From NCBI GenBank assembly GCA_950097015.1, contig CATNEN010000008.1, positions 3,844,001 through 3,908,000 on the forward strand: a stretch of DNA of 64,000 nucleotides, in the 5' to 3' direction. A model generated the notes under the pieces. That model was not told where the DNA came from. It ran no database searches and saw nothing but the letters and a program-made list of their open reading frames with translations. Of this stretch, positions 17,685-64,000 are shown piece after piece. The stretch is from Macrostomum hystrix (Eukaryota > Animalia > Platyhelminthes). The position numbers and the translations under genes are program-made. Every line of letters begins with the position of its first letter. Position 1 is the first letter of the stretch.

Positions 17685-17765
17685 TTTATATAGGCGTGAG
17701 GCTGACGCGCATCATTGTGTCTCAGATTTCATTGGGCTATACTGGCTTATTCTTAATCCTATTGG
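17685..17765 (-). promoter_or_regulatory. Candidate internal promoter for ORF3 (two CCAAT boxes and a TATATAAA)
   Basis: - strand CCAAT at 17761-17765 and 17731-17735, TATATAAA at 17685-17692, about 75 nt upstream of ATG 17609. Confidence 0.45.
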
Positions 17766-17884
17766 ATCCCTACTTGATTTCAATTAACCCCTACCTAATT
17801 GACTGGAAGTGGCTAACCCCTACTCCCTTTCTATCCCTTGCACGTGGTTTCCTTGTGTTACTATTGCGTCACCCCAATCTCTGC

Positions 17885-20800: not shown

Positions 20801-22633
20801 CGACATAGCAAATTGATGTTGAATCCCTAAAAGTACAAGATTCATGAGCCTCTGGAAGGTTCCTGGGGCATTGGACAAACCTTGCGCCATAACCTCATAC
20901 TCAAACTGGCCTCGGGTTAAAGTAGAGAAGGCGGTCATGAACTTGTGTTCTTCCTTTATCGGCACCTGCCAATAACCAGAATTCAAATCGAGACTACTAA
21001 AGTACTGACTACCAGATAAATAGGTGAAAGTCTGATGAATGTTAGGAAGCGGATACGGAACATAGTTCACCTTCGAGTTTAACACTCTAAAATCGCTCAC
21101 AATCCGTATGGATCCGTCCTTTTTCGGCACAATGACTAATGGAGTAGAATAAGTTGAATAACTGGGCCTGATTAAATTTTTAGCCAACATGTCATCCAAC
21201 TGTGTGTCGACTTGCTTTTGGAGATGGGGTGGTATTCTCCTAGTTGGGATCCTCACGGGAGTCTCATCCTTCAGTGAGATCTCATGTGTGATCAGATGGG
21301 TTAAACCCATATCCAACTCATTCTGTGAAAAAGCTTCACGATGCTCTTTCATCAATTCAATCACTGACTTCCTTTGATCATCGGTAAGATCTTGACCAAT
21401 CTTGACCTCATGGATCCACGCATCTTCCACAGTCTGTGTCTGATTGACTCGTCCGGTAGGTTGACTGACTACTTCTTTTTCGGCTTCGAAATATTTCAAT
21501 TCACTTGCCTTCACTGGTTTGGCTAGGCCTACCAATGTTGACTTCGACAGCTTCACCTCAACTGAATTGTTATTCACAATCTCCACAATGGCGGACCCTT
21601 CTCGCATTGTGACTAGAGTGGGAGCCATCTCGACTGTCAATTCTTTGGCTTTTACGCCTTCGCCAATCATACTCACTGTCATAGGTGTTCCAAAATTGCA
21701 CTCGGCATCTCTCGCCAATCTCACTGGGATTCTCAACGCACTATTTGCAGGAATCACTACTTTCTCCTGAGTATACACTCTGCATACTTTTACAGGTAGA
21801 TGAGTGAACTGCATAGGAATGCTTGCTCCTTCATTTAGAATCAACATGCCTTTAGCAAGATGAATGCTATCACAATGTCCTAGGAAAAATTCCATTCCTA
21901 AGATATTGTCGCTCTCATGTCCACACAAAAGGAATTCTATTTCTATCTGGATGTCTCCGAATCTAACTGGAATACAACTCTCGCCTTCCAATTGTACTCT
22001 GGTTCCGTCGAAAGTAGAGACTCGCTTGTCTGTACTTCTTATCTGTTCTGGCTTAAGTAATTTTGACCAAATAGATTTGCTCAAAAAGCTGTTCCTAGCC
22101 CCTGTGTCTAGGATAAAATTAATTTCCTGATTCTTAAATTTTCCTACAATTACAGCTTCAAATCCTTCAGGTTTAATAAGTTCTAGTTTAGAATTAGAAA
22201 CAAATACTTTGCGTTTGTTCTCACGTGTCCTTGAGTATTTTCCAGATGTTGCGGCGTCTGATCTCGGTGCTGATACTTCGGAAGCTGGTTCCTCCAGGAT
22301 TGACATGCAGGGGGCTGACGCAATGGTTGCTGATACAGATGCCGCTGGGGCTAACGCAATGGGTGCTGACGCAGATGGTGCTGACGCAATGGGTGCTGAC
22401 GCAGATGGTGCTAACGCAGATGGTGCTAACGCAAATGGTGCTGACGCAGATGGTGCTGACGCAATAGGTGCTGACGCAGATGGTGCTGACGCAGGGTAAC
22501 TCGATTGCTTTTGTGCATTACGCAAATTCGACGACTGGGCTTGGTATCGCCGATTCTTAGAGGCCTGAGGTTCGAATCGGGGTTTACTAGAGGGGCGCGG
22601 CCTCGACTCTCGTCCCTCGATATTCAGTTTCCC
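17885..22633 (-). CDS. pol: Pol polyprotein (protease, RT, RNase H, integrase), reached by -1 frameshift from gag
   Basis: LDTGA protease; LDLNSGYWQ, QGL.NAP, YIDD RT; DASD..IGAVL RNase H; H-x5-H..C-x2-C zinc finger and DFIGP..DNG..NG.VER integrase core. Frame is open from the slippery site at 22633. An 18-bp repeat (ASAPSA) lies at ~22330-22500. Confidence 0.95.
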   Translation of the reverse strand, partial: GKLNIEGRESRPRPSSKPRFEPQASKNRRYQAQSSNLRNAQKQSSYPASAPSASAPIASAPSASAPFALAPSALAPSASAPIASAPSASAPIALAPAASVSATIASAPCMSILEEPASEVSAPRSDAATSGKYSRTRENKRKVFVSNSKLELIKPEGFEAVIVGKFKNQEINFILDTGARNSFLSKSIWSKLLKPEQIRSTDKRVSTFDGTRVQLEGESCIPVRFGDIQIEIEFLLCGHESDNILGMEFFLGHCDSIHLAKGMLILNEGASIPMQFTHLPVKVCRVYTQEKVVIPANSALRIPVRLARDAECNFGTPMTVSMIGEGVKAKELTVEMAPTLVTMREGSAIVEIVNNNSVEVKLSKSTLVGLAKPVKASELKYFEAEKEVVSQPTGRVNQTQTVEDAWIHEVKIGQDLTDDQRKSVIELMKEHREAFSQNELDMGLTHLITHEISLKDETPVRIPTRRIPPHLQKQVDTQLDDMLAKNLIRPSYSTYSTPLVIVPKKDGSIRIVSDFRVLNSKVNYVPYPLPNIHQTFTYLSGSQYFSSLDLNSGYWQVPIKEEHKFMTAFSTLTRGQFEYEVMAQGLSNAPGTFQRLMNLVLLGIQHQFAMSYIDDIVTYSKNFNDHLSHLKEVFKRLIIAGLKLRPKKCNLFHRELKYLGHVISTEGIRTDETKIEAIKTWPKPKDVKELRSFLGLCNYYSRFIKNYAEAAHPLFQLTRKGIKNFQERWSKEHDEAFESLKNRMMSTEVLAYPEFVDDEKVKMVLDTDASDSRIGAVLSQIQSDGIERPIAYFSRAMKESEKRYPITRKELLALVDAMRHFRFYLLGKKFLARTDHKAIIWLLRQTEAQGILGRWVERLNEFSFDIEHRSGAKNQNADSLSRSPADVPEAEQVIEPIVQSCSVMEESGQEVKANDSLYSLTQPQTALSEGEKKTLDPNSRIQSTISGQGEVRIPSELEHDSSIPLPSPVPEEFNPIESEDMLQATSSKCEKLLTDFLPSPLKREQIIASQRDDPVIKVLIEWKKSGENNPQLPEIVSPELKKMRKFFEDMKVENEMLIISEDDSWKVVLPQSLDKLVLSDLHDSPLAGHLGRDKTIQRVRQRFWRPGLVKAVEAHIAECIPCLESKRGNPIQAPVQSFPISEPFHRLHVDFIGPLSKESKRGHKYVLTIVDSTTRYPFAFPTRNQKSDTVIKILQERIFAEYGQCQWLHTDNGKAFASKQFKAFCEMYNVKHTFTTPYHAQSNGLVERFNKQIKSIVTCLIEKDHSDWDLMIPAALVAVRTSVNKTTGFTPHYLLFGREAVLPMDSQISQPKSFASYPSYVTEHAERLKIARDIVKRKLEKVVSNRQESAKNSKLPKTVPVGSLVLINNPQLDSEESHKFHRKKRSAFRVIEQISDVVFRVQKEEPGQLVGNVMIVHRDNITIVPNSTQEELIRGSQAAPEKKAKKTEVKVRGSQPKEKERPVLTEEDESEEEEDRLEWQCHFRENPSEINGEDLELGAEIEVEDESHTEPEATSSEEESESEGTAEGLATATSEGGMYIAQNEEREGVTSRPRRQIRPPARFEGYLQRLATVFSILGNLQI

Positions 22634-23523
22634 TGATATCGGTACTGCTGCTGCTGCTGTGAGCTCTTGCAGTACTTGGCAATATGCCCAACTTTGTTAC
22701 AGTTAAAACATGTCGGCGGAGGCCTCGACTGTTGCTGCGGCTTCAGATACGTCTTCGGCTGCATGAGCGGCTGAGGTGTTACTTTCTGGCATTCAGCCTT
22801 CCTCCTTTCCTGAATCAGGTCTTCAATTAGCTTCTTCTGCTTATTGATTTCATACTTCTGCCTCTCGATGGTCTCCTCCATCTTCTTATTCCGATCCTCG
22901 TCAACTTGCTCGTCTTTTACGACTCGTACTCCATTCTTGTGCGACATATGCCACGCTGCTTCTATGCGTCTCAGCATTCTCCTAGCCTCTTGCAGGCTGG
23001 CTGGCTGTGCAAATATTAACTTTTCCCTAGTGTCGGAGGGGATTCTCGCTCCTTTGATGAACTGCTCTACTACCTCCTCCTCCCTTTGTTCTGCATTCAT
23101 ATTGGGGAATGCTTGCGCGGACAACTCAATCAAGGCATCTGCGAATGAGTCAACGGGCTCATTCCTCCCTTGCATTCTACCTCTAAATTCCTCCCTAAAC
23201 TCGGCTGAGCTTCCTAGTCTTCCAAACCTTTCTACAAGTCTTTCCTTCAGCTCCTCGTATGTTAGTTCTTCTGGCAAATTCAAACGTTGGACGGCTGCAA
23301 ATGCAGTCGCAAGATCTAAGTTAGCTAATAGCTCATTCTTCCTATGCTCGTCCTGTTCTAATCCTTCATTGTCGCATCTCTGATCGAATGCTGTAAGCCA
23401 AATTCTAATGTCCTGGCTTGGTGTGTACTTTTGGATCTTTACATGTCTCATGGGTCCTAATTCTAGTCTATTTCTTAATTCTTCTGCTAACAAGCCAATA
23501 GCATCATTAATTCCTGCGGCCAT
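22624..23523 (-). CDS. gag: Gag with CCHC zinc knuckle
   Basis: 299-aa ORF downstream of the PBS; CFNCNKVGHIAKYC knuckle; QxxxExVxxF capsid motif. Confidence 0.93.
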   Translation of the reverse strand: MAAGINDAIGLLAEELRNRLELGPMRHVKIQKYTPSQDIRIWLTAFDQRCDNEGLEQDEHRKNELLANLDLATAFAAVQRLNLPEELTYEELKERLVERFGRLGSSAEFREEFRGRMQGRNEPVDSFADALIELSAQAFPNMNAEQREEEVVEQFIKGARIPSDTREKLIFAQPASLQEARRMLRRIEAAWHMSHKNGVRVVKDEQVDEDRNKKMEETIERQKYEINKQKKLIEDLIQERRKAECQKVTPQPLMQPKTYLKPQQQSRPPPTCFNCNKVGHIAKYCKSSQQQQQYRYQGN

Positions 23524-23569
23524 ACCTTTATCTAACTTTCAAACTGACTGTGTGCTTTAGCTGGATTCC

Positions 23570-23590
23570 AATCCTTTACCGCTGACACCA
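23570..23590 (-). promoter_or_regulatory. Primer binding site (tRNA-Leu-like)
   Basis: TGGTGTCAGCGGTAAAGGATT begins 3 nt after the 5' LTR end. It resembles the complement of eukaryotic tRNA-Leu 3' ends (from memory). Confidence 0.75.
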
Positions 23591-23593
23591 AGT

Positions 23594-24348
23594 TGTCGTA
23601 GGGCTCCTTACTTAAATCTTACAGCTGCCACTAAGTTGTCGTAGGCTCTCTCCTCTTTGGGTTTAAATATCACCGATACTCTTTTATTAAATATTAACAA
23701 TTGCTTATTTCACACCTTGAATTAACCTTTGAAATAACTCTTAATTTCCCTTGTCTATGACTTAGTTATTCTTCATAGGCTAGCTATGTATCCTCTTATT
23801 GCATATGCATATATTGTTTAACTTGGCCAGATAGGCTGCTTTCCTTCCAAAATTGGTAGCGTTCTCACGAGTGTCCGAGCGGCAAGACACTTCTTCCTCT
23901 CCTTACTTACTCACAACTGTCTGGCTCTCTGGTTTGTTCCCAGTCTTTCAAGGCTTCCAATGGACTGAAGTTGCCCAACTTTGCACACAGTGCTATTCCA
24001 CCAATCAGGATTTTACCCTCAGCTCTTTAGTTTTACACTCTACTACGGCTTTTTATAACTATCTCCTTCTTTATTCTTTCGAATGTTCACCAACTTGTGT
24101 ATTATCACAGACCTGCTTTTCTCCTTCTCTCTAAAATAATTGAATTCAAACACTTTGAGATTTATTCTCCTTTGTTTTCTCAGAACTGGGCACGGGGCAC
24201 CGGTTGGGGATTTTGGGCAAAACTGCATCTATATTTATAGCAAAATTGGGGTGGATGATACGGTGTATTATAACAAAATGAAAATCGGGAAAAAGCATTT
24301 GGCGGGAATTCAACTTATAATTCTACGATAAAATTTGGGCCTGCCTCA
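23594..24348 (-). repeat. 5' LTR (755 bp)
   Basis: No difference from 15513-16267 noticed on reading. Confidence 0.97.
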
Positions 24349-47971: not shown

Positions 47972-50145
47972 ATGCCAGATGAACTCGACGGAGCGGCTTC
48001 CGTGGGCCGGATCCGCCTCACCCTGTGGCAGTTCTGCGACTACACCACCGCCCACGGACTGGGCAGGTTCGGCGCTCAGGGCACCACACTGGGCCGCACC
48101 CTGTGGCTGTGCTTCCTGCTAGGCACCTACTCTGGCTTCACCTACCACATGTACACTCTAGGGGCCTGCAGTTCGTGAGTGTGCCGCTCTCAACCAGCCT
48201 GTCAACCTCGCTGCCGTTCGAGTTTCCCGACGTGTACTTTTGTCCCAGCGAGACGGTGACAATGAGCCGGGCCAGTCCTCACGTGAACATCTTCGATCTG
48301 ACGCGGCTAATCAATTGCGACGCCAGCTGCAGGAAGAGAATGAAGTTCGACATGTACTGGACGGAGGGCTCTGACTCGGCCGGGGTCAAGTACGCACCTC
48401 CTGCCCAGGGTCTGCTGGATGTGATCTCCGCTGTGGAGGAAAACATCACTCACGCGCTGCACTATGAGAACAATGGTGAGTCTGAGCATTCTTATTTGCT
48501 AGAGCAGTGGACTGTGAAGGCATCCGTTACCAACCCGAATATGTACCCCAGCTCATTCGAGTACTTATTTTACAGTTGATAAAACTGAAGCAATGGATTA
48601 TTTAGTGTCTTGTTCCAGGACACTTGGGCTGAGATACGAACTCCCGACCTCTCCCGAACTGAATCCCGAAAAAAACCGGTGAAATATTATAACAATTTTT
48701 TAGTAATTCAGCGAAAAGCCTTGTTGATAGAATGAAATTTTTTTACGAGTCTAAAACAATTCCACTGTAAAAAAATCATAAGCCTTTCAAATGCTTCTCT
48801 GCAGCGTTCTTCTACACCTGCCGCACGACACCAGACGGAGATGAGTACAGGGGCAACTTGTCCACTGCGCCTGTGTTTGACAGCAGTTTCATACTGGCTA
48901 AGTTAGATCCGCTTGATCCTTTCGTGAGCTCGATTTCCTGGGATAAGCTGCCAACCTACGCTTTGATAGGCTGAACAAATTTTCGAAGCCTCCTGAGCAG
49001 GAGCGCCTTCCGCCACCAGATCCCGTCACATACCTGATTCCGTCCTGGCGCACAGGGTGGAGCTTCGCCAGCTCTGGATTGTAAGTTTGAGCAAGTTCTG
49101 CTACTCTTTCTTAGAAATTCGCAACTGTGAGATTGAAATAAAAGCTCAGAATTTCAAGTTGAGTCTTTGTAGGCAAATTTTCATGTTTAAAGCCACAATA
49201 TTTTTCAGGGATTCAGTTAATCCGACGAAACTGCAGTCTACTGTTGACAGGGCGGAGAAGATCGTCGTATTAAAGGACATTCTGACAGTAGTTAACAGCA
49301 GCATGTAAGTATGCCCTAACAGATCTCGTTTGACTGATTACAAGTGGACCAATGAATGAGACACTGACCTTTGAACGAGCAACCCAGCAAGACTGCATCA
49401 ACCTGTACGCTGTTAAGAAGTTCATTCAGCACTGCAACTGCCTGCCCTCATTCCTGCCGGTCCCAAAGGAGTTTTACCCGACCTACCCCTACTGTTTCAA
49501 CAAGACTGACTTGCCTAGCATTGAAGAATCCGAAATGGGTGCTACATGCGCCGCGTGCATGCCATCTCCCGCTACCAGAAGGAGGCCCGTCCGCTGTGCA
49601 TGCAGCTCTGCCGGACCAACTCCTACTCAGTTCGACCGACAACCTACCCATGGCCCGGACTTACACTCGAGAAGTCGGTGCAGTTTATGCATAACAGCTT
49701 GGGCGACTGGTCCTATCCTTCCAACTTCCTGTACTCGAAGGGAACCTCTTCTACATGGATATCAGATCGAGGGAGGTGTACAACCAGCATTTCTGCATCG
49801 GAGCTTCTTGACTTCAACTACGAGCTGGACGTCATTGAGAAAAGTTTGGTCAAGCTGACCGTCGGTGCCATCAGCGACTTTGGACAGGAAATGACAGAGG
49901 AACAGTCCTGCACTATCAAGAACCTGATGGCTTGACTTCAATATCTGACGAACTCAAGCAATCCTTGCCTTCATTTGAACATGCCGAACTAATCAGAAGC
50001 AAATTGTTTGTCTTTAGGCGCCCTCGGACTCTGGTCTGGAATCTCAGTGCTCACCGCCTGCGAGGTAGTGGAACATTTTGTCTACCTGGCGATATCAATG
50101 AAGCAGAAAATCACCCGGAATCTCAAGCCTCCCACGCCCAGCTAA
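47972..50145 (+). pseudogene. DEG/ENaC (amiloride-sensitive Na channel family) paralog A, frameshifted and internally deleted
   Basis: TTAHG pre-TM1 motif, FPDVYFCP, thumb cysteines and ALGLWSGISVLTACE TM2. Defects: +2 nt at ~48161 versus paralog B, further shifts at ~49540 and ~49932, and a jump from kringle start to palm region at ~48958. Confidence 0.8.
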
Positions 50146-51321
50146 AATAGATGAAAGGCCACTTATCAATTGATCGATCACTAATTCACTAATCAAAAAA
50201 CTTCACTACTCGCCCACTCCGCTGACACCTGTACGACCAACGTGCCGTCAGGGATGAATTTTGCCCGGTTGGCCAACCAACAACAACTTCATGGTCTCCC
50301 TGCAGTGGCCCCAAGTAAACAAACACACTTTTTAGACCATGATGTGTTTTACTGAACTCTGTGCTTCTATGCATGTTTTACTTAGAGCTGCAAATGTTTC
50401 TGACTTATAATCTTATTGCTTTAGATAACAGTAAACCGCATATTGCCATAGCAGAGAAAACTGATTGCTTTTGATCGTTCCATCTGCCTGGGAGACTGAG
50501 TGTAGAACACTTGAGACTGTGTAACTGTTTGACTGCTTTCTGAATCTTTCTTTACATTGCACCTTTAATAATTGTATGTACTTACCTCGTTGATTATTCA
50601 GTACTCGTACGTTCGCTTTGTTCATCGGACAATATTTTAAACATCGAAATAAAAAGCGATAATTGTCAATTGTGAAATACGAGTATAATGTGACAATAAG
50701 AAGATTTTTTTCTGCCCGTTTCAATATCAAGCTACATTATTTGCCAATAAAAAATTGTGAACTCATCCACTCGACAGAAAGCCAAGGTTACAGAGAGTAA
50801 AGATCTTGCTAAACGATTCCTACGACTTTATGTTGCTAAAAATAAACTGAGCAGTTGGTAGGCAGCCTCCGGTCTCCTAGCCAATGGCTGGCAGTCGATG
50901 CAGCCTGCCGTACAAACCTCATCAGAGCAGTTTTTACGAGCCCCTTCTTTTTTAAGGGGACTAATTATGATTAGGGATGATTCACAATGCCTCCTGCCTG
51001 CTCAGATGATAAAATAGTTTTTTATGCCTTGACTGAGCTAATCTTTACTGCACAAGCTGACAGGCTCATGCTCACAGGCTCATGCTCACAGGCTCATGGC
51101 TGTAGATTGTAGGCAGTAAAAATCAAATTATTTGGAGGACATTTTTAGATTACATTGAAACAGATCTGAACTTTTGGTTAACAAAAAATCTTGGTAAGTT
51201 TAAGTTACTATTTTTACTACGCTCGTAAGATGGTTACCACCGTACGAGTGTCTGCAACTTCAGTGGACTGGTAACCATGGTAACCACTACCACGCAATAG
51301 CCTTCAAACCACACGCAGGGC

Positions 51322-54300
51322 ATGAAAGACTCCCAGCAGGAAGACAGCGAGGTTCGCAACTCCTTGGCACAGTTCTGCGAATACACCACCGCCCACGGAC
51401 TGGGCAGGTTCGGCGCGCAAGCCACCCCGTTTGGAAGGGCCCTGTGGCTGTGCTTCCTGCTCGGCACCTACGGTGGCTTCACCTACCACATGTACACTCT
51501 GGGCCTGCAGTTCGTGAGTGTGCCGCTCTCAACCAGCCTGTCAACCTCGCTGCCGTTCGAGTTTCCCGACGTGTACTTTTGTCCCACGCATACTGTAACA
51601 ATGAGCCGCCTGGCCAGTCCAATTGATGGCGCCGAGATTTTGAATAACGTCAGCTGCAGCCAGGACTGCATGCTCAGGCGGCTGCTCTTTGAAATCTACT
51701 CGTTTGTCGAGGACAGCGCGCACAGCGCCACCACAGAGGCCCTGATTGACACCTTGGCCACTGTCGAGGAGGCAGTTCTGAACAAGCTCCAGCACGGAAA
51801 TTTGAGTAAAAATATTTATTTCTTTGTTATTTACGCTCGTAAAAAATATTAGAAAATGATATACAAAAACTACACTTTCAGCCACGAGCAACACCTGTCG
51901 AATGACAATCGACGGTGAGGAATACACGGGCAGTCAGTCGGCTGTTCCGGTTTATCACACTCTCTTTCTTGAGACGCAAAGTGCAAGTCTCTTGACAGTA
52001 CCCGACCAGCCCTACGTGACCTTCAGCAGCTGCATCAGCTGGAACGAGGCCGCCAAGGAGCTGAATGCGATGGGTCTGGGCCTGTTTGCTGACAAAATCC
52101 TTAGCGCAGGCTTCGCTGACGACGACAGCAAATGCAGGCAACCGCACGGCCTACCGCTGACCGATTTAGGCAGCTACGCAACGCGTGAGTGTTTTCACTT
52201 GTTTAGAAATTCGATCATCATTGAGCACATGCTTACTTTTATTATGAAACCTCTCTGATCAGATCCGGTCTCCAAGTTCATCGGCTGCATCAGCATGTCA
52301 ACTTGGATTGGCAATTCAACGTGCATAAAAACGAATGCCAGCGTCATGACTGTGGCCATGTGCGAGCAGTGCTGCTACAACAGCCAGCTCCAGTTTGCTG
52401 GCGTACAGGCATACGCATGCCACTGCTCAGATAGGATTCCTGCGGCAGTTGAGAACATTTTCCCGCCTGGTTCTGATAATCCCTGCTTAGAAAAATGTCC
52501 TGGCAATTTCGACCAGGTGTGCGGAGGTGTTGGAAGCCAACACAACGGTCACCCGGATGGCTTCTTATCGATCTATAAAGTGATCGAGCCAGGTGATCTT
52601 TCAGGTAAAATGATTTGATACATTTTTACTTTAGACGTTGGGACTAATGATAATTGACTCTCAGATTTATGACAAGCTTGTCGCGCTTAGTGTTCCAGAC
52701 ATCAAATGCTTATCTTTTCTGACTAGAATTACGGGAAAGTGACAGCAGCTAACTCGCCTCGGTGGTCGGTTGGCGATTGATTTCTCGTGTCAACAGCCTC
52801 ATTGGCACTGCGTTAGACTTAAGACTGTTTTTTTATTTTTTGCCTGATTAATTTTTCATTTAATAGGAAGCGCTCCGGGTTTGGTACTGCCGTTCCGACC
52901 GACCCTAGCTGGTCTCAACACCGGCCCTTACTGCTTCTACAGAGAGCGGGAAGGCAGCCTGACAGCGTCCTATTGCAACATTCCTTACTGCCGTGAGTCC
53001 AATAGATACAAAAATTAAGCTACCGTACAGTTAGTTTAAATTTATTATTAATTACTGATGAGTATCTGGGCTTGAATGAAGTAATTTTTATTTTAACCAC
53101 TGAGTTTTGGCTCTTAGGCCTGGTGGATTGGGGATCGGGATGAGCTGCTGGGTGTAGGTTTTAACTTGGCAGTTAATGCTGCAGTAGCAAAGTCCATATA
53201 AGTCTAGATGAGCATTACTCTCTTACTTCGCGACAGCAAGCACGTGAAATATGAAACGGAAATCATTAGTGCACCAATTCTGTTCAGGTTTCTAGTTCAC
53301 GCAGTAGAAATCCAAAAAGTAAAAAAAGTGTTTGACGCAATCAACTCGAAATTCTTAAGTAAGAAATTTCCCGGGATCATCTCTGCTACAATGAGCTCGC
53401 GTCGAAATTTCTTGAGTCTAGTATTCGAATACACTCAGTCTTCGACATCCGCAGAGATTTCAAATGACTTTGACTGCCTGCGATCTAACGAGGCCGCTCA
53501 GTCTGACGAAGTTCAACTGGCTCGCTACACCGGCCAGCAGAATGTGACGGAGAGCGGAGAGGCCTGCACAGACTGGCGCAGCTTCCGGGCGCTGGTGCTT
53601 AGCGGAGACCTGAAGTACAACTGGGACTTGAGCTACGCCACAGCCGGTGCTCGTAAGCTGTTTCTATTTGCATTGCAATTCCTCAGTGTACTCGTAGAAA
53701 CAACTTTTAGAATCACAAAACATCGGCATCGCCGAGATATTCAAGGAGTCTTGTCAGGGTGTCTGGTGGCGAAAGCCATCGATATACAGATTCAGAGCAA
53801 ATGATTTTGCAAAAAATTCACAATTTTGCAAATTCACAAAATTCACAACATAGAGGTTTGTACCGAGGAGTGGTAGTTGGCCTTGTCACCAGGGACTTCC
53901 ACATGAATCGGACGGCTTTGATTGTTAGTTCATGGGCGGAAAATGATTCAGATGGTGGACTTTCAGGAAAATTGGTCATTCGGTTTGGGAGCTCTCGTGA
54001 AATAGGCATTTGAAATAACCCCTGGTCTTTCCCTCAGGGTGAAAATAGAGTGGTCCTTCTACTGTTAAGGCTCACAACTCTGAGGAAATAGCAAACCCTT
54101 TAGGTAGGACGGACGCTAATAACAATTAATGTTTGGCAACCAAAAACTGTTATGCAAGGCAATTCGAACCGGTCATTAAACCGTTCATTTAACCCTAAAC
54201 CGTTCACATTCATTTGGGGCCGCATCAGGGGAGAGAAGGCTTGGGTGTTTCGCTTGCAAATTACCCCATGAGGGCCGACCCCGGAGTGAGCACATTGTCT

Positions 54301-57300
54301 CCTCGCTTTCTGTGGGTCGCAAAATAATTTGCGCTAGTGCACACATCCCGTTACGACTATTACATTATTAATTGCTCTCATTACAACATTTTTTACTTTG
54401 AGGTTTACTCAGTTCTGGTCTGAAATTTGTAAAACAATATTGCCCATTACTTGCAATCTTTTCACAGCTCGAGTTGCCAGGTTGGATGTTGAAACCTCAG
54501 ACTACACTCTGCGGGACGGCTTGCCGCTGCTCTACAATCACTGCCGCGCTGTCCGCCTGGTCGCCGACCTGATATTCGAACAGACCGACTCCACCTACCT
54601 CTACGTGTGAGTATTCCACGGTTGCAGAGTTGGGAAAAGAAATACGATTTAAATATCTCGAATTAATTTTTTTTAAATCAAGAAAATTCGCTCTCGCACT
54701 CGCTGTCTACACAGTCGCAAGATTCAAGAGTTCCCCACTGCTGCCTGTGCCTACACAAAGTCCGGCGAAGCCTTCATTGGACTCTGTAACGTGAAGTTCT
54801 GTTGTAAGTTTCTATTTTAAAAGCTCAAGGCACTCAACAGTCGGGACTGGGTCACTAAAAAATGAATTTCGGTTACAGACGAAACAATCGGCAGCCAGTA
54901 TTTTGCTACGGTGAGTCGTGTCGGTATCGACCTACTGTTGAGCAGATTTGGCAGCAATCTTGGCATCGGGTTCACGGGCTGCTTAGTGACAAAGAACGCC
55001 TGCCGCATTGACAACTTCACCACAATTGTGCATCCGTCCTATGGCATCTGCCACCGGTTCAGCAGCAGATCGCTTCAATTCGTGAGCACCGATGCCAGCA
55101 GCGCCTCTGAAGTTCGGCTGACATTCGCCTACTTCACCGACGCCACAGATAGTCGCGGTCGTCAGTTTGTCAGCACGAAATTTTTGAAAAATGCACTGTC
55201 GCACTGGACAACGGATCCGGACATTCGCGATGCCATGAGGGTTAGTTTACCAGTACTTATTTGGGGTTACCTGGAAGCCATGGTAGAGCGTTTTAACACG
55301 TCTGCCTCTCGCACCAAGGTCCCTGTGCTCGATTCCGCAGCGAGGCCACTTTAATTTGGGTTGAAGCCTCTGATTAGCTCCCTTTGTTCATCCTTTCTAA
55401 TTGCCCAGGTGATTGTTGTGCCCCCTGGTCAGTACCCCTGGACAGAGAGCGTTGTAACTGTGAATCCCGGGCAGCACATGAACATCATGATTCGCTACGA
55501 CCGAACTATTCGACACTCAAAGCCACCTGAGAGAGCGTGCCTGGCATCAGCCGAACCTATCGAGTACTACATGCCGAATTGGAAGTCTGCAGTCCAATTT
55601 TATAATAAGAGCGAAGAGTGAGCACCGACCCGCAGTGTAGAGTCTGTCTTTATTTTTGCTTCGCTAGAAAAAGCTATAAAATGAACCGAATTCAATGAAT
55701 TTTTAGAGAGTTCGTCAATTTGACAGCTTTTCGATCTGCTTCCAGCTGGGTGGAGAAAACTGACTTGCTCAGGGAGCTGCTCAGTGGACAAAACAACGGC
55801 AGGTTTGTACTTTTGTCTGCCGTACTCGGATTGCTCAAGGATGACATTGCTCAAGTAGTTAGCTACTTTAGTTAATCTACTTTAGTAGGCCCTGTGATTG
55901 CTATGTCTGGTAAGCTGTGTGGGTCGGTACAGTATGAGAATAATAATAATAATAATAATTGCAGGAGGGCTGCGGGCAATGGCACATCATTTAGTGACAC
56001 TAGACCCGCAGCCAGCGAGGAGGCAATTCTGCCCATTTCGCTGACTCCTGAGCACACAGATACTGTACGCAGGCACACGCTCACACAGGTGTGTACATCT
56101 GCCCTGACTTTCTCATCGTCAGGCAGTGTACACTTCAATGTGCCTTGGAGGTTGGCCCTCAAGGGCGTAAATTGCACGACAAGCCACCAAGCCTTCTCTC
56201 CGTGGCTGCGCCCCAAATAAATGTGGCCTCGCCGTGGAATCGAACTTAGGGACCGTGGTGCGAGAGGCAAACGCGATAACCGCTCTGCCACCGACCCCCT
56301 TCGTACAGTGTGATACATGAAACCGTCTCTGCCTTTCATTCGTGTAATCGTTGAACTTACTCATTCAACCACGCTGAAGTATCCACCGACCTTAATTCGC
56401 AGGTCTGCGATCTACGAGACAATGCGTTTCCCGGCTGCCACAGTTGAAGACTGCATAAGCGACTTTCTGGTTCGAAGGTTTTTATCAGTGTGCGGTTGCC
56501 TGCCATTGTTTCTGCCAATTCGGGTTGGTGCATTTCCGTCCGAAATCAATCGCTGCTTCAATGCCACATCGCTGGACAGCATTCGCAGCATGGGACAGTG
56601 CTACCAGCGGCAGATATACCAGCTGGCAGTGCTCTATAGCGAGGCTCGTGCCGCCTGCGTGCCTCTGTGCGAAACTCGCAGCTACTCGGTGAAGCTTGTC
56701 GCTTATCAGTGGCCGGAACTGTCCTCGCTAAATGCCTTCGAACTCCTCAAGAGCCACCTCACGGACTGGAACTATCCGAACAATTTCCTTGGTTCCAGGG
56801 GGCTTGCCAGCTTGTTCGCTCTGTATTCACAAGCGCGACTGGTCAACCAACTGGAGACGTCATTGGATGCGAGTTTAAGAAAAGAAATGGCTGTACAAGA
56901 GCTGTCTGATAACTTGACTTTCGCTGAAAAGAATCTCGTCAGGATTACAGTTCAGGCATCCAGTCTGTTTGGCCAGGAAATCAAGGAGGAGCCGTCATAC
57001 ACGAGCAAGAATCTGTTGGCTGATCTAGGCGGTGAGTAACAGAGAGTGTACGCATTTGTTGTGCGAGTATGTATTGAACCAAGCATAGCCCCATCGTCAA
57101 TGACATAAAGATCGCTTTATTTTTTTCCTGTCTTCTGAGCTGCAGGCAGATGGAAACTGATAGGTGAAGAACATCATTTGATGAATTCCTGGTTTTCTTT
57201 TTGGGAATTTATCACTTCCAGCAACTGCTGGGTGCCCCAATAATTAAGACGAAATTAGTAGAATTTGTAGATCTTACCTTCTTTAGTTTAGTTGTTTCTC

Positions 57301-59252
57301 TTGTCTCTCTTCGGTTGCTGCAGGCTTTGAAGTTCTGTCTGGTGTTTGGCTTCTGGTTGCCCTTCAGCTACCTGGATCGTTCGAATACAAGAGGAGTTAA
57401 CTTTTTCTCTTTGTTTCGGTTGCGGTTACAACGGATCAATAGTAATTAGGGAACCTAGGTTCGGTGTAGTGTCTTCCTGACTCCGATTTGTCGTTGACGT
57501 CGATTAACCAATAGTCACTTGTGGAGTGTGTTCCTTCTTACCAGCTTTGGTAGGTTCTAACACGAGTCTGGCGCTTACCCCTTTTTAGTAAATTCAATGT
57601 AATCACACGTCTGTGATTACGATTTAGTCGTTGGTTTAACGATTACTTGGAGAGGTTTAACTTAGCTCAATAAAAGACGTCTAATTAATCATTAATTAGG
57701 ATAACTCAAAGAACTCTTACCACAAGTCTTGGACCCGGAGTCCGATTCACTTCAGTCTCAGATTCCTTCTCTCCGTTTTCTCTTCTCGGCGAGACTCTGA
57801 ATCTGGGCTCGCTTCGGAGCTCTTGTATTTATAGAGAATCGGACCCTCTCGGTTCGATGAGTGCGTTCAAAGTACAGGTGTCAAACTGGTGTCAAACAGT
57901 TTGGGTCAACGCTTGACAACTTGAGACGTTAGACTTTTTTATAACTAAACTAGTAGAAGCGCAAAAAGATGGATTATCACTTTCTTGACCTTTTGATTGA
58001 TTTTGGGTAACCTAATTGGTGGGATTGTTTGTTGTCTATGACATGAAAATTTATTTGATACTATTAATAGTAGTCACATGACTTTTAATTTATTCGTTTC
58101 TCCTTTTTTGGTGAAATGAATCACATGCTGTACTTGTACGTTTTTTGGTTCGTATTTTCTAAAAATACTACTAAGCGGATGAGTAGAGTAGTTAGCGCAT
58201 GATTGGTTAAAATAAATATTACCGTAATTCTGCACTCTACACATTTTGCCGTTTCAATTTACAAGTTGAATCAAACAAACCACGCGTCATAAGGGGGCGA
58301 GTGGGTCAGCGGCTAACGTCGCTGCCTCGCACTCCAAAGGACGCTAGTTCGATTCACCCTTCAAGTCACGATTAATTTCGGGACTTGTTGGGGGGGTTTG
58401 GACAGTAGCGACCGGCGGAGGTGCACCATATTTCGTGCAATCAAAGCTTGAAATAATAGCTTCGCTCCTACATTCTGTGTGCCTGTTCTGCGTTGTGTGA
58501 GTTGTGTGCGTTGGCGCTGGGGCGTGAGACCTTGCGGGGGGTGGCTGGAGGGCGGGTGTACACCGCCGCGCGCTTTCTGGACTTCCGTCAGCGCGATTGG
58601 ATAAGTGTACACTCATCACCCGGCCCCCCTGAGGACTGATTTCTTATCAGCCTTCCGCCCCGGCTTGGTCTGCTATGTGCATGTGGGGCTGGGGTGGGGG
58701 GCACTGCTGTCTATTCTGGGTGCCTCCTGCCCTCCCCGGCTGGTCTGTGCTGCTGTGTGTGGTGCCTGCTCAGGGGAGGCGGCGCGATGGGCGCTAAGCG
58801 CCTAGTTCGCCGGTCTGGGGGCGTGCCGCTCCGTCGCTTGTGCGACAAGTGCCCCGAGCCCCCCTGCAAATAGATAGAGATAGAACCACGCGTCATGCGG
58901 AAACACCACATGATGTATTGCTGGTCCCACTTCCACCATATATTGCGGAACGTATAAAATCCGATTGGTAAATAGCAACTTTACTGTCTACGAGTACTTG
59001 CTCACAACTTTATTACGGGCTAGCTTTTAGTAAATTCCACTAGTTTTCTATCCGTATCCTAATCGCAACATCGCTCTCATGTCATTCATAGGCGCCCTCG
59101 GTCTCTGGTCTGGTGTTTCCGTCCTGACTGCCTGCGAATTGATCGAGCTGCTTGCCTACTTGGCAATCGCTTTAAGGCGCAAGGTCAATCGAAGAGATCC
59201 ACTGCAGAGAAAACTGAGCATTGCGACTCAGAAAGCACTGCAACGAGTTTAA
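51322..59252 (+). CDS. DEG/ENaC paralog B with kringle and WSC domains inserted in the extracellular finger region
   Basis: Approximate exons 51322-51809, 51882-52185, 52264-52605, 52867-52993, 53455-53650, 54469-54608, 54715-54803, 54880-55241, 55409-55620, 56402-57033, 59091-59252. TTAHG, TM1, FPDVYFCP, C..C..F..HPSYGICHRF, CGC..CF..C..CVPLC..Y thumb, LLADLGG/ALGLWSGVSVLTACE TM2. One junction region (52640-52910) is unresolved or frameshifted. Confidence 0.85.
55960..56297 (-). mobile_element. Full-length SINE family 2 with (ATT)n tail
   Basis: GGGGTCGGTGGCAGAGCGG A-box, AGTTCGATTCC B-box, 3' GGCTGCGGG/CCCGCAGCC stem, (AAT)n on the + strand at 55940-55960. A body fragment also lies at ~54205-54330. 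Confidence 0.8.
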
Positions 59253-60586: not shown

Positions 60587-63500
60587 TTAGCAAGCCGAGT
60601 TGATTTGGCTATGGCTTTTAGAATCGACACTGTCACCATCAGCTGCTTTCGCTGCCTGGTAATGCTCCGCAGTGGAAGCCATCGGCGTCGCTGACACATT
60701 GCGTAGTCGTTGGCGACGACTTGCTACCACCGCAAAGATGCGGGCAACTAGTTCGATGAGTTCGCACGCGGTCAGCACAGAGACACCCGACCAGAGACCT
60801 AGGGCACCTGTTTAGGATGAATTCGAATTGGCTGACAAAAGTGGGGTTTAGGCTGACTGGAGTGGGGTTGAGGCTGACTGGAGTGGGGTTGAGGCTGACT
60901 GGAGTGAGGTTGAGGCTGACTGGAGTGGGGTTGAGGCTGACTGGAGTGGGGTTGAGGCTGACAGGATTGGGGTTGAGGCTGACTGGAGTGGGGTTGAGTT
61001 TAAGTGGTTTATGGCTAGAAATGGCTGTGTTCCTGATTTAATGTTGACCATTAGTAGACGGATATCGTTCGTTCGTACCCCCTAAGTCGGCCATGAGGTT
61101 CTTGATAGTGTAGGAAGGCTCCTCCGTGACCTCCTGCCCAAATTCGGTGGCCGCCTGCACTGTGACCTTGGCCAGCCGCTTCTCCACCATGCGCAACTCG
61201 GTTTCGAACGCTTGCACATTGAAGGAGGAGGATTGCCAGCCATTGCTCACAGAATATTCGTATGCCTTTAAGTAGGAGTAGAACAGACTTCCTATGCCGC
61301 TAGAGCGTAAGAAGTTACTAGGATACGACCAGCCGCCAAGTTTTCCCATCAGGAAGTTGAAGGCATTCTCAGTTGTAAGGCCGGGCCATGGATAGACGGC
61401 CTGGCGCAGCGAGTATGAGCGAGTCTCGCACAGCGGTGGACAGGCCAGTCGGCGGGCCTCGCGTTCGTGACTGGCCTGCAGGCCGATCTGGGCCTGGGTG
61501 CACTGCTCCAGGCGGTCAAGCTCAGCGCTGGACAGATTCGTCGAGCCGTCAAAGCAGTGGCTGTGCAGCGATGCCATGTCCGATGGAATCGGCAGGAACG
61601 ATGGCAGGCAGCCGCACTGGGACACGAACTGCTGCACTTTGTAGGTGTTGACGCAGTCGTCCTGAGTGGCCCAATCGAAGCGAACTGTGCGACCAGTTGG
61701 ACGACTGCGGAATTGAAGAGGAAGTTGGTGATGAAGGACGCGGAGCATTTGGTGATGAAGGAGCGTTGGGAATGTTGGGATTCTTATTGCACATACGTGC
61801 CGGTCTCCTTGGAAGCGAGAATAGTCCTCAAAATGTTCAGCTTTTCCGACCATTCTATTGTTGAATAAAGCCTGCTCAGATTGGCAGTGTCCCTAAAATT
61901 GACGAAAATTATTTTGTGTTTATGAATCGAGACCTAGGCTAAACTAACTTTGAGATTGACAAAACTACAAATCCATCAAGCGATCACCATGGTAGCGAGG
62001 CCACCCATGCCCAGCTTGTGTTCCAGGTAGGCAGTGCGTAGGTAACAGGCGGCAAGCTCCGAGTGCAGGGCTGACTCGGCGGCTTCGGGAAGCGGACGGT
62101 GCGGTCGTAGCGAAGCTTGAGCTCAGCGTGCTGTCCGGGGCTGACTAGAATCGAGTCGGAGCGGCGCGGGTACTGGCCAGCGGGAACCACAGCTACCTGA
62201 TTATTAGTTTCAGATGATCAAAACTATACGAGCTACTCAATTCATCATGTTCTGTTTGTGTTTAATTATGCTATACCGATACAACTAATTAGCTTTCTGA
62301 TATTTTCTAGTGCAGCTGAAAACCATTGCGACAATGCAGAGTAATGAGTCGATGTTTTGCTATTTGAGCGACCTTCCAAGCCAAAGTGAAACTCAATCCC
62401 GTTAAGTCTCCTTACTCTCAATGCGCTCATGGTGTCGTCTGAATCCAGCAGCCCTGACGTGAGCACAGCTGCCGTCTTGCTCAGGTTGGCGAACTGCCTT
62501 CCAAGCGTGTCCGTGTCATCGGTGAAGTAGCTGAAGGTCAGGCGGGATTCCGTCGCCTTGTTAGTTGTAAACAGCTCTGCGAAGCCGGAGGTGTTGAAGC
62601 GATGGCAGGGTCCCAGCTGCGGATGCAGCACAGTCTGGAAGTTGAGCAGGGAGCAGGGGTGACCTGCAAAGCTGCAGTCGGTCAATCCGATGCCCAGGCT
62701 ACTGCCGAAACGCGTAGCAAGCTGATCGGCACCGACCCTTTCGCGTATCACGCTTGTAACTGCACGAATTTTTGTGTCTGCAAGATGCAAAAGTTTCATC
62801 CTTTGAAATTTCGAAACTGAAGGCAGAAATGGACGAAACAATATAAGACGGTTCGAGACGAGGCGAGGCGAGACGAGACGAAATAAGACTGACAAGACGA
62901 GACGAAACGAGACGAGACGAAACGAGACGAGATGAGATGAGAGGAGACGAGACGAGATGAGACGAAATAAGATGATACGAAACGAGACGAGATGAGATGA
63001 GATGAGACGAGACGAAACGAGACGAGATGAGATGAGATGAGACGAGACGAGACGAGATGAAACGAAATAAGATGAGACGAGACGAGACGAAATAAGACTG
63101 ACAAGACGAAACGAAACGAGAAGAGACGAACCGAGATGAGAGGAGACGAGACGAGATGAGATGAGAGGAGACGAGACGAGATGAGATGAGAGGAGACGAG
63201 ACGAGATGAGATGAGAGGAGACGAGACGAGATGAGATGAGAGGAGACGAGACGAAATAAGATGAGAGGAGACGAGACGAAACGAGACGAGACGAAACGAG
63301 ACGAGATGAGATGAGACGAGACGAGATGAAATAAGACGAGACGAAACGAGACGAGACGAGATGAGACGAGACGAAACGAAACGAGACGAGATGAGATGAG
63401 ATGAGATGAGACGAGACGATGTAAGATGAGACGAGATGAGCAGAGACATGACAAACGTAAAGATTTTTAGCGCTTTTATACTTAATAGTTTAAGAAATTA

Positions 63501-64000
63501 ATAAAAAAATTAATACTTTTATAATCCAGATAAGTCATAGCCCAGGCAAGTCGAATGTGGGTTGAAAAACTTGAACTCACGGCAGGTGTCCATATTGCAG
63601 GTGTTGAAGTCGACAATGTCACCAATACGATAGGCGCACACAGGCCACACAGAGTCGATCATTGTTATGCGCCTAAAATGTTAGAAATCGATTGAGTTTC
63701 GGATGTAACTAGCTGTCAATCGCAGGCATGTATCAGGTAGCACAGCTGGCTGTTGCAGTTACCGGGCCACGAGACTGTTATCAGGCAATAAATACACGTA
63801 GTTGAGCACGACTCTGGCTGGTCTGCAGTAGGAATGGTTCAGCTCCATGTCTGATGTTTCGATGCTGACGTTCATAATTCTGCCTACAATTTAGGTTGCG
63901 GTATACATGGGTGCAATATTGATGCACAATGGCTGGCCTTTTCTATCAGCTACTCACTCATCAGCGCATCCGGATGGACTGGGTATTCCATGCTTCCGGA
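60587..64000 (-). CDS. DEG/ENaC paralog C (3' part; 5' end beyond window), also kringle-containing
   Basis: Approximate exons 60587-60808 (ALGLWSGVSVLTACE), 61083-61795 (thumb, LMADLGG), 61990-62192, 62400-62790 (C..C..F..HPQLGPCHRF), 63567-63668 (WPVCAY..TCNMDTC) and 63790-63885 (NHSYCRP). Confidence 0.85.
60835..61000. repeat. 21-bp minisatellite GGGGTTGAGGCTGACTGGAGT in last intron of paralog C
   Basis: About 8 tandem copies. Confidence 0.92.
62848..63445. repeat. Compound pentanucleotide microsatellite (GAGAC/GAGAT/GAAAC)n in paralog C intron
   Basis: About 600 bp of pure 5-mer variants. Confidence 0.96.

What the first reader, a model, noticed from the sequence alone, without database searches (positions are those of the whole stretch)
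51882..54803. DEG/ENaC channel with kringle and WSC modules inserted in the extracellular finger domain
Seen: between the conserved FPDVYFCP strand and the finger/palm motif (C..C..F..YG.C..F), the exons encode four modules. (i) A partial kringle (CRMTIDGEEYTGSQS..SCISW..CRQPHG). (ii) A WSC domain (FIGC..MTVAMCEQCC..FAGVQ..CHC..CLEKCPGN..VCGG..SIY). (iii) A kringle C-half (YCRS..GPYCF..SYCNIPYC). (iv) A six-cysteine kringle spread over three exons (DCL..YTGQQNVTESGEACTDW / NHCR / PTAACAY..LCNVKFC). Known: this region is hypervariable in the family (ENaC GRIP domain, nematode degenerin extensions), and kringle+WSC is the ectodomain pairing of Kremen receptors. I do not know of a DEG/ENaC with this architecture. 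Inference: a channel subunit with built-in protein/glycan-binding modules, possibly gated by ligand, protease or matrix tethering. The pore motifs (HG, small Ala at the deg site, GVS filter) look intact.
Basis: partly seen in the sequence, partly recalled or inferred. Interest (0 to 1): 0.85.

Follow-up and report, generated by a model that had tools for sequence, protein, structure and literature searches.

The report
Sodium channel with kringle-WSC-kringle arm
A flatworm gene for a DEG/ENaC sodium channel carries six extra exons that build a roughly 400-residue kringle/WSC/kringle arm on the channel's outer "finger", a design I found in no paper or full-length database protein, though its inclusion in mRNA and its function are untested for this copy.

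Summary
On the + strand, 11 exons (51322-59252) have canonical splice sites and matching phases. They give one open 1013-codon frame for a DEG/ENaC subunit. Pfam ASC matches run in order across five exons.

- **WSC:** proven. Pfam scores 36 bits against a cut-off of 27.8, and the fold model matches Kremen1 and yeast Wsc1.
- **Kringle B:** spread over three exons, supported by weak hits that are nearly all kringles.
- **Kringle A:** split, with Cys1-3 before the WSC exon and Cys4-6 after it. The WSC therefore seems nested inside a kringle. There are three modules, not four.

A Macrostomum lignano protein fragment (A0A1I8HZ70) reads WSC, kringle A end and kringle B start contiguously, as my exon joins predict. 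A diverged minus-strand paralog keeps the same exon phases.

No RNA run was listed. No full-length ASC+WSC protein and no paper turned up.

The scan has noted this family before on other DNA of this genome. The proposed role as a docking or tether arm is inference.

The parts
51322..51805 (+). Exon 1: start codon, HG motif, TM1, FPDVYFCP strand and the first finger helices. Ends in phase 1.
   Evidence: Pfam ASC positions 1-84, E 9e-12, 45 bits. Donor TGA|GTAAAA.
51882..52184 (+). Exon 2: kringle A N-part with Cys1-3 (motifs CRMTIDGEEYTG, CISWNE, CRQPHG). Phase 1-1. Bases 51933-51998 (66 nt, GT..AG, in frame) may be an extra small intron.
   Evidence: Motifs read from the sequence. The Mytilus kringle starts CRKSTKGTEYKG. 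There is no Pfam or PDB hit, and the single-sequence model has pLDDT 48. GC3 of the inner 66 nt is 0.43 against 0.67 for the exon.
52263..52604 (+). Exon 3: complete WSC domain on one phase 1-1 exon, with 10 Cys (8 canonical plus 2).
   Evidence: Pfam WSC 36.0 bits, above the 27.8 cut-off, E 8e-9. The eight canonical Cys are invariant or nearly so in alignment A1. The AF2 model has pLDDT 80. Foldseek matches Kremen1 5fws at E 6e-5 and yeast Wsc1 7pz2 at E 9e-5, probability 1.0.
52867..52992 (+). Exon 4: kringle A C-part with Cys4-6 (GPYCF, YCNIPYC). Phase 1-1.
   Evidence: 8 of 8 PDB hits are kringles (neurotrypsin, apo(a), Kremen1), aligned at domain positions 55-79. 72.5% identical to M. lignano P0022 residues 65-104.
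53455..53652 (+). Exon 5: kringle B N-part with Cys1-2 (DCL, YTGQQNVTESGEACTDW). Phase 1-1.
   Evidence: Pfam Kringle positions 8-28, E 0.031. 16 of 18 PDB hits are kringles (prothrombin, HGF, tPA), best E 0.03. 62% identical to P0022 residues 105-167.
54468..54606 (+). Exon 6: kringle B middle with Cys3 (YNHCR). Phase 1-2.
   Evidence: Motif only, with no PDB or Pfam hit. The minus-strand paralog has a homologous exon with ETSD and NHSYCR and the same phases.
54715..54803 (+). Exon 7: kringle B C-part with Cys4-6 (AACAY, LCNVKFC). Phase 2-1, 89 nt.
   Evidence: Cysteine spacing read from the sequence. The paralog exon is also 89 nt with the same phases and the same Cys spacing (VCAY, TCNMDTC).
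54879..55240 (+). Exon 8: ASC finger helix and beta-ball (RVGIDLLLSRFG, C..C..F..YGIC). Phase 1-0.
   Evidence: Pfam ASC positions 155-209. 45% identical to the paralog at 62739-62437.
55409..55617 (+). Exon 9: ASC palm. Phase 0-2.
   Evidence: Pfam ASC positions 229-294, E 1.3e-3. Splice sites.
56403..57031 (+). Exon 10: ASC thumb and palm, including the deg-site Ala (LLADLG). Phase 2-1.
   Evidence: Pfam ASC positions 295-435, E 5.6e-11. The acceptor at 56403 is the only one that fits phase 2.
59092..59252 (+). Exon 11: TM2 with the GVS filter, the C-terminus and the stop codon.
   Evidence: Pfam ASC positions 438-455. The acceptor at 59092 restores the DLGG/ALGLWSG consensus.
47987..50150 (+). 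Upstream tandem copy, decayed. It has frameshifts in exon 1 and exon 10, has lost Cys2 of kringle A, and carries a deletion from mid kringle A to mid exon 9.
   Evidence: tblastn and frame maps.
60710..64000 (-). Diverged paralog that runs off the window end. Visible parts are the krB N-part donor (~63958), krB middle (63883-63796), krB C-part (63672-63584), exon 8-like (from ~62779), exons 9-10-like and TM2.
   Evidence: Exon phases and the 89-nt exon are identical to those of the studied gene.

Best explanation
This is an intact 11-exon gene for a DEG/ENaC (ASC family) channel subunit of about 1013 residues.

Six phase-compatible exons are built into its finger domain and encode a disulfide-rich arm of about 399 residues. 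Kringle A has a complete WSC domain nested in its Cys3-Cys4 loop, and a second, loop-expanded kringle B follows it.

Shown here: the exon structure, the WSC identity and fold, the kringle identity of two pieces, and conservation of the joins in a M. lignano protein fragment and in a paralog.

Inferred: each subunit of the trimer projects this arm from the part of the ectodomain that senses ligands, proteases and force in other family members. The arm docks an extracellular partner, either a glycan or matrix protein through the WSC or a protein through the kringles. That docking anchors the channel or biases its gating, so the arm acts as a built-in tether or co-receptor.

The usual kringle lysine-pocket motif (D-x-D after CRNP) is absent from both kringles. 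They are therefore more likely scaffold or protein-contact modules than lysine binders.
For: - One open frame runs through 11 GT-AG exons, and the cassette exons match the phases of the flanking ASC exons.
- The ASC HMM is covered colinearly. Exons 1 and 10 are each above the Pfam cut-off on their own.
- WSC scores above the Pfam cut-off, and its model matches Kremen1 and Wsc1.
- For krA C-part and krB N-part, the PDB hits are all or nearly all kringles.
- M. lignano A0A1I8HZ70 (P0022) reads WSC, krA C-part and krB N-part contiguously, and is 62-72% identical to my exons 4 and 5.
- P0022 scores Pfam Kringle E 1.3e-4. All 22 of its PDB hits are kringle proteins, best E 7e-4, and the alignment spans a kringle-to-kringle junction of HGF.
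- Cysteine counts per module are 6, 10 and 6.
- The paralog keeps krB exon phases, an identical 89-nt exon and the phase-1 join to exon 8, at only about 45% protein identity.
- The neighbouring decayed copy shows what loss of constraint looks like at this locus.
- In the Kremen1 WSC the first and last strands are adjacent and antiparallel (PMC5014086). The domain's ends therefore lie together, as a nested insertion needs.
Against: - No RNA evidence exists for this copy. None was listed, so inclusion of every cassette exon is unproven.
- Pfam Kringle never reaches its 34.3-bit cut-off on single exons. krA N-part, krB middle and krB C-part have no statistical support.
- The krA N-part alone gives no confident model.
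- The function is pure inference. No ligand, expression site or current is known.
Confidence: 0.7

Rival explanations
1. The cassette is optional. Because exons 2-5 are each phase 1-1, and exons 6 plus 7 together are 1-1, alternative splicing could give both a plain channel (exon 1 joined to exon 8) and armed isoforms, or a form without the WSC. The arm would then be a regulated accessory, not a fixed part.
For: Phase symmetry of the exons. An in-frame 66-nt GT..AG stretch inside exon 2 has lower GC3, which shows that alternative readings are possible.
Against: The M. lignano fragment includes the WSC and both flanking kringle pieces. Skipping the WSC alone would leave a 38-residue Cys3-Cys4 loop. 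No transcript data exist either way.
Confidence: 0.25
2. The module exons belong to a separate gene nested in a long intron of the channel gene, or to a mis-joined model, and are never part of the channel protein.
For: No transcript spanning the exon 1-2 or exon 7-8 joins was seen here. The database searches found only a fragment without ASC sequence.
Against: The six exons hold no start codon context, no signal peptide exon and no stop. Every border is phase-matched to the ASC exons on the same strand. The same interleaving and the same phase-1 join to exon 8 are kept in a paralog at about 45% identity.
Confidence: 0.05
3. The gene is a silent or recently dead copy in a decaying tandem cluster, and only other family members are used.
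For: The neighbour upstream is a pseudogene. No RNA run was listed for this stretch.
Against: The 1013 codons contain no stop or frameshift, all splice sites are intact, all 22 cassette cysteines are kept, and exon GC3 is well above intron GC.
Confidence: 0.1
4. The arm works like the ENaC GRIP domain. It would be an autoinhibitory finger insert that a protease must cut to open the channel, and not a docking arm.
For: It lies in the same subdomain as GRIP, which sits between finger helices alpha1 and alpha2 (PMC6197857). A minimal R-x-x-R (RVAR) lies at the start of exon 6.
Against: RVAR is not kept in the paralog, which reads RIMN. Kringle and WSC are stable disulfide-locked binding folds, not excisable tracts. 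There is no sequence similarity to GRIP.
Confidence: 0.08

Closest known systems
DEG/ENaC channels with enlarged finger regions (ENaC GRIP domain; nematode degenerin extensions)
   Same: Same channel core: HG motif, two TM segments, GxS filter, deg site and colinear ASC HMM. The insert is also in the finger subdomain, the family's variable sensing site (PMC6197857).
   Different: GRIP is a small beta-strand blanket unique to ENaC with protease-excised tracts. Here the insert is about 400 residues of recognisable mobile modules (kringle, WSC) on their own phase 1-1 exons.
C. elegans EGAS channels (EGF plus ASC domain ion channels)
   Same: They are a precedent for a DEG/ENaC subunit fused to extracellular shuffled modules (name and definition in PMC10424705).
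   Different: The modules differ: EGF there, kringle and WSC here. The EGAS layout was not examined here, and EGAS gave no currents in that study.
Kremen1/2 ectodomain (Kringle-WSC-CUB)
   Same: It pairs a kringle with a WSC domain. Kremen1 is the top structural match of the WSC exon model (E 6e-5, 24% identity) and appears among the kringle hits. In Kremen1 the KR and WSC domains form one rigid ligand-binding unit (PMC5014086).
   Different: Here there is no CUB domain and no single-pass receptor. The WSC sits inside the kringle, not after it, and a second kringle follows.
Yeast Wsc1 mechanosensor domain and spiralian multi-WSC secreted proteins
   Same: Same WSC fold (7pz2, E 9e-5). The nearest sequence relatives of the WSC exon are mollusc and fungal multi-WSC proteins, one of which (Mytilus XP_076108178) also ends in a true kringle.
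   Different: Identity is only about 30%, none of them contains an ASC domain, and the Mytilus protein has its kringle beside the WSC repeats, not around one.
Macrostomum lignano A0A1I8HZ70 / A0A1I8H6P2 ('WSC domain-containing protein', 171 aa fragments)
   Same: They are true homologs of exons 3-5 (46-72% identity) with identical exon joins.
   Different: They are fragments without the ASC part and are annotated only as WSC, so the public record does not show the channel context.

Membership tests
DEG/ENaC (Pfam ASC, PF00858) | Significant, colinear match to the ASC profile over the whole ectodomain and both TM segments | tested here: met
   Exon 1 scores 45.1 bits and exon 10 scores 42.6 bits, each above the 23.6 cut-off. 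Exons 8, 9 and 11 score below the cut-off but match in order. HMM coverage is 1-84, 155-209, 229-294, 295-435 and 438-455.
DEG/ENaC (Pfam ASC, PF00858) | HG motif before TM1, a GxS filter in TM2, and a small residue at the deg site | tested here: met
   Read from the translations: TAHGL, GVS within GLWSGVSVLT, and Ala in LLADLGG.
DEG/ENaC (Pfam ASC, PF00858) | Forms a trimeric, amiloride-sensitive cation channel | not testable with these tools
   Needs expression and electrophysiology.
WSC domain (PF01822) | Profile match above the curated cut-off, with the eight conserved cysteines | tested here: met
   36.0 bits against 27.8. C8, C33, C37, C52, C54, C74, C78 and C86 are invariant or nearly so in A1.
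WSC domain (PF01822) | WSC/PAN-like sheet-plus-helix fold | tested here: met
   AF2 model with pLDDT 80 and pTM 0.75. It matches Kremen1 WSC, yeast Wsc1 and a glyoxal oxidase entry at probability 1.0.
Kringle domain (PF00051) | Profile match above the curated cut-off (34.3 bits) | tested here: inconclusive
The best single exon scores 15.1 bits, E 0.031. The contiguous natural homolog P0022 scores 22.7 bits, E 1.3e-4, although it holds only two partial kringles.
Kringle domain (PF00051) | Six cysteines in kringle order with the Y-x-G, C-x-x-W, C-R and P-(W/Y)-C motifs | tested here: met
   Kringle B: DCL, YTG, CTDW, NHCR, AACAY, LCNVKFC. Kringle A: CRMT, YTG, CISW, CRQP, GPYCF, YCNIPYC. The Cys4-5 and Cys5-6 spacings are canonical, and the other loops are longer than usual.
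Kringle domain (PF00051) | One contiguous domain of about 80 residues with 1-6, 2-4 and 3-5 disulfides | tested here: not met
   Kringle A is interrupted by about 150 residues (WSC plus linkers) between Cys3 and Cys4. Kringle B has Cys2-Cys3 and Cys3-Cys4 loops about twice the usual length. The disulfide pairing could not be tested.
Kremen (KR-WSC-CUB receptor) | A CUB domain after the WSC, and a single-pass receptor topology | tested here: not met
   No exon gave a CUB hit. The modules lie between the two TM segments of a channel.

The most novel reading that the evidence does not exclude
The arm is a self-contained tether. In this reading the WSC-in-kringle unit is rigid and binds matrix glycan or protein, so this channel family would be gated, or held under tension, by direct attachment of its own finger to the extracellular matrix. 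In nematodes that role needs separate MEC-type matrix proteins. The tether model of DEG/ENaC mechanosensing would then be testable with a single polypeptide. It would also be a rare natural case of one disulfide module nested inside another through insertion of a phase 1-1 exon.
Probability: 0.2. Interest if true: 0.8.

Novelty: new variant of a known kind. Interest (0 to 1): 0.62.

Why it matters
DEG/ENaC channels sense protons, peptides, proteases and force through their finger and thumb regions. How outside partners couple to the gate remains an open question, above all for the tethered mechanosensory degenerins.

A subunit that carries its own kringle/WSC binding arm at that spot offers a compact natural experiment. 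The arm can be removed, swapped or offered ligands. The paired kringle and WSC also recall the ligand-binding face of Kremen1.

The gene is a clear example of exon shuffling into an ion channel, and of a domain nested within a kringle.

It appears to be a multi-copy, Macrostomum-lineage family whose public protein records are fragments labelled only 'WSC domain-containing protein'.

Tried and rejected
- **RNA evidence.** The look-up of sequencing runs listed no run, so read laying could not be used.
- **Full-length homologs.**
  - The WSC exon, searched against 1.84 billion representatives, gave 129 hits. Almost all are multi-WSC proteins at about 30% identity.
  - The only close relative among them is the 171-aa M. 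lignano fragment, and blastp with my ASC exons matched none of the 130 fetched proteins.
  - The search for homologous proteins with the exon 1 ORF, P0022 and the exon 8 ORF found nothing new. That tool's length window excludes full-length kin.
  - The look-up of encoding contigs had no record of P0022.
- **krA N-part.**
  - It has no Pfam, PDB or Atlas hit.
  - The single-sequence AF2 model is poor, with pLDDT 48.
- **krB middle and C-part.** No PDB or Pfam hits, including the paralog's middle exon.
- **Single Mytilus kringle used as a phmmer probe against all six-frame segments of the window.**
  - krA C-part ranked first and krB N-part fifth, but the E-values were about 1, too weak to count.
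  - A hit at 18472-18531 proved to be antisense to a retrotransposon.
- **Rejected readings.**
  - An apparent frameshifted kringle in the paralog at 63838-63740 is rejected. The true krB C-part exon lies at 63672-63584.
  - The upstream copy is not a retrocopy. It keeps an intron and carries frameshifts.
- **Comparison with the pseudogene.** It could not settle whether 51933-51998 is an intron.

Full report
**Setting**

The window is eukaryotic, with short AT-rich introns. The closest public protein I found comes from Macrostomum lignano.

Three DEG/ENaC copies lie side by side:
- a decayed copy at 47987-50150 (+);
- the gene under study at 51322-59252 (+);
- a diverged paralog on the minus strand from about 60710 that runs past the window end.

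**Gene model**

I tracked splice sites and phases exon by exon and never built the joined protein. The 11 exons are:

| Exon | Coordinates | Phase in-out | Content |
|---|---|---|---|
| 1 | 51322-51805 | 0-1 | ASC N-terminus |
| 2 | 51882-52184 | 1-1 | kringle A N-part |
| 3 | 52263-52604 | 1-1 | WSC |
| 4 | 52867-52992 | 1-1 | kringle A C-part |
| 5 | 53455-53652 | 1-1 | kringle B N-part |
| 6 | 54468-54606 | 1-2 | kringle B middle |
| 7 | 54715-54803 | 2-1 | kringle B C-part |
| 8 | 54879-55240 | 1-0 | ASC |
| 9 | 55409-55617 | 0-2 | ASC |
| 10 | 56403-57031 | 2-1 | ASC |
| 11 | 59092-59252 | 1-0 | TM2 and stop |

- All borders are AG/GT and no exon has an internal stop.
- The sum is 3039 coding bases, or 1013 codons.
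- Exons have GC 0.50-0.59 and GC3 0.53-0.77. Introns have GC 0.21-0.49. The cassette exons look like the ASC exons in this respect.

**The channel core**

Pfam ASC matches run in order across the exons:
- exon 1 covers HMM positions 1-84 (45 bits);
- exon 8 covers 155-209;
- exon 9 covers 229-294;
- exon 10 covers 295-435 (43 bits);
- exon 11 covers 438-455.

The HG motif, both hydrophobic segments, Ala at the deg site (LLADLGG) and the GVS filter are all present. The cassette therefore sits between HMM positions 84 and 155. That is the finger, the subdomain that holds the ENaC GRIP domain between helices alpha1 and alpha2 (PMC6197857).

**WSC**

- Exon 3 alone scores 36.0 bits on Pfam WSC, against a cut-off of 27.8 (E 8e-9).
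- I aligned it with 40 WSC segments from the database hits. The eight canonical cysteines are invariant or nearly so.
- An AlphaFold2 model from that alignment has mean pLDDT 80 and pTM 0.75.
- Foldseek places the model on Kremen1 (5fws, E 6e-5), on the yeast Wsc1 sensor domain (7pz2, E 9e-5) and on a fungal glyoxal oxidase entry (9n3u), all at probability 1.0.

This module is settled.

**Kringles**

Taken exon by exon, the evidence is uneven.
- **Exon 5 (krB N-part):** Pfam Kringle positions 8-28 at E 0.031. 16 of its 18 PDB sequence hits are kringles (the other two are phage tailspikes), best E 0.03.
- **Exon 4 (krA C-part):** eight PDB hits, every one a kringle (neurotrypsin, apolipoprotein(a), Kremen1). 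All align at the last 25 positions of the domain.
- **Exons 2, 6 and 7:** no hit in Pfam or the PDB. Exon 2 also has no usable Atlas neighbour, and its single-sequence model is poor.

What these three exons do have is the motifs:
- Exon 2 holds CRMTIDGEEYTG (the true Mytilus kringle starts CRKSTKGTEYKG), CISWNE and CRQPHG.
- Exon 6 holds NHCR.
- Exon 7 holds AACAY and LCNVKFC, with canonical Cys4-5 and Cys5-6 spacing.

Cysteine counts by module are 3+3 for exons 2 and 4, 10 for the WSC exon, and 2+1+3 for exons 5-7.

**A contiguous natural homolog**

The one close relative of the WSC exon among 1.84 billion representative proteins is P0022. This is UniRef A0A1I8HZ70 from M. lignano, 171 residues, labelled only 'WSC domain-containing protein'.
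- It reads the WSC C-half, then the krA C-part, then the krB N-part without interruption. The boundaries are exactly those of my exon 3-4 and 4-5 joins.
- It is 72.5% identical to exon 4 and 62% identical to exon 5.
- On this natural sequence Pfam gives WSC at E 3.8e-5 and Kringle at E 1.3e-4.
- All 22 of its PDB hits are kringle proteins, best E 7e-4. The alignment runs across a kringle-to-kringle junction of HGF.

So exon 4 is the end of one kringle and exon 5 is the start of the next. The reading frame of exon 4 is also fixed by this homolog.

'YCRS' lies in the +1 frame of exon 4, which reads WYCRSDRP and then a stop. The spliced frame reads LPFRPT at that place, and M. lignano has LPFRPN.

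Exon 4 carries only Cys4-6 and exon 2 only Cys1-3. I therefore read them as one kringle whose Cys3-Cys4 loop holds the whole WSC exon. In Kremen1 the WSC sheet order is beta1-beta5-beta3-beta4-beta2, antiparallel (PMC5014086). Its first and last strands are then neighbours, so the two ends of the domain lie together, as a nested insertion requires. My model likewise has long first and last strands.

This nesting is an inference, because I could not fold the joined sequence. The out-of-frame near-canonical motif remains unexplained. It could be chance or the relic of an old compensated frameshift.

A further open point concerns 51933-51998, which is 66 nt long, has GT..AG ends and is in frame. 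If it is spliced out, the Y-x-G to Cys2 spacing of kringle A becomes 11 residues, close to the 10 read in kringle B (exon 5). Its GC3 is 0.43 against 0.67 for the exon. The pseudogene comparison does not decide this.

**Is the cassette part of the channel?**

No transcript was available, since no RNA run was listed. The indirect evidence is strong.
- The cassette has no start, stop or signal-peptide exon of its own.
- It is phase-locked to the ASC exons on both sides.
- The minus-strand paralog is only about 45% identical in the ASC exons. It still keeps a krB middle exon in phase 1-2 (63883-63796, NHSYCR).
- It also keeps a krB C-part exon of exactly 89 nt in phase 2-1 (63672-63584, with the same Cys spacing).
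- It has a phase-1 acceptor into its exon 8, with the same 13 residues before the RVG motif.
- By contrast, the upstream copy has frameshifts, has lost a kringle cysteine and carries a large internal deletion. That is how an unconstrained copy looks at this locus.

Alternative splicing stays possible, because the cassette exons are phase-symmetric.

**Novelty**

- Full-text searches combining ENaC or degenerin terms with kringle and WSC found no description.
- A comparative DEG/ENaC study that used M. lignano genes does not mention such domains (PMC9234716).
- Kringle plus WSC is the Kremen pairing, and it also occurs in a Mytilus protein with five WSC repeats and one kringle.
- The protein searches found no full-length ASC+WSC protein. 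The word-based tool could not see long proteins from my exon-sized queries.
- Earlier notes of this scan report the same family on other pieces of this genome. One copy is said to be transcribed, and another note records the nested WSC. I treat these as leads. My own tests agree with them.

**Mechanism**

Shown here: an intact channel core with a 399-residue, 22-cysteine arm of binding-type modules on the finger.

Inferred: the arm docks an extracellular partner and thereby anchors or modulates the channel. I prefer a docking or tether role to a GRIP-like protease switch, for two reasons:
- the modules are stable disulfide-locked folds;
- the one R-x-x-R site is not kept in the paralog.

Neither kringle keeps the acidic D-x-D pair after the CRNP motif that forms the lysine pocket in plasminogen-type kringles. 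That point rests on my own knowledge of the family, so lysine binding seems unlikely.

**Limits**

- Read laying was not used, because no runs were listed.

Noticed in passing
window 47987-50150 (+): A tandem DEG/ENaC copy that is a pseudogene. It has frame changes in exon 1 (~48163) and in the exon 10-like part, a kringle A start (TCRTTPDGDEYRG) in which Cys2 has become Ser, and a deletion running from mid kringle A straight into mid exon 9. One stretch of 27 residues of exon 1 is identical to the live gene, which hints at gene conversion.
   Followed up: partly
window 52867-52992 (+), +1 frame: The +1 frame of exon 4 reads WYCRSDRP followed by a stop. This is a near-canonical kringle NYCRNPD motif about 14 codons before the in-frame GPYCF. 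The real frame reads LPFRPT, which itself aligns to FCRNPD of prothrombin in the P0022 search. It could be the relic of a compensated frameshift, or chance.
   Followed up: partly
window 15741-24330 (-): An LTR retrotransposon with a 1603-aa pol-like ORF (22696-17888) and a 304-aa gag-like ORF with a zinc knuckle (23538-22627). Direct terminal repeats at about 15741-16250 and 23822-24330 give identical translations. No family search was run on it.
   Followed up: no
window 62854-63419 and 60840-60998: The paralog's intron between krB C-part and exon 8 holds about 113 copies of a 5-nt unit (CGAGA on +, TCTCG on the gene strand). Its last intron holds 7.6 copies of a 21-nt unit.
   Followed up: no
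P0003 (Mytilus galloprovincialis XP_076108178.1): An uncharacterised mussel protein with five WSC repeats and one true kringle (79 bits). It shows that WSC and kringle co-occur in spiralian proteins outside Kremen, and is a possible pool for the shuffled exons.
   Followed up: partly
window 51933-51998 (+): An in-frame 66-nt GT..AG stretch inside exon 2 with lower GC3. If spliced out, kringle A gets near-canonical Y-x-G to Cys2 spacing.
   Followed up: partly
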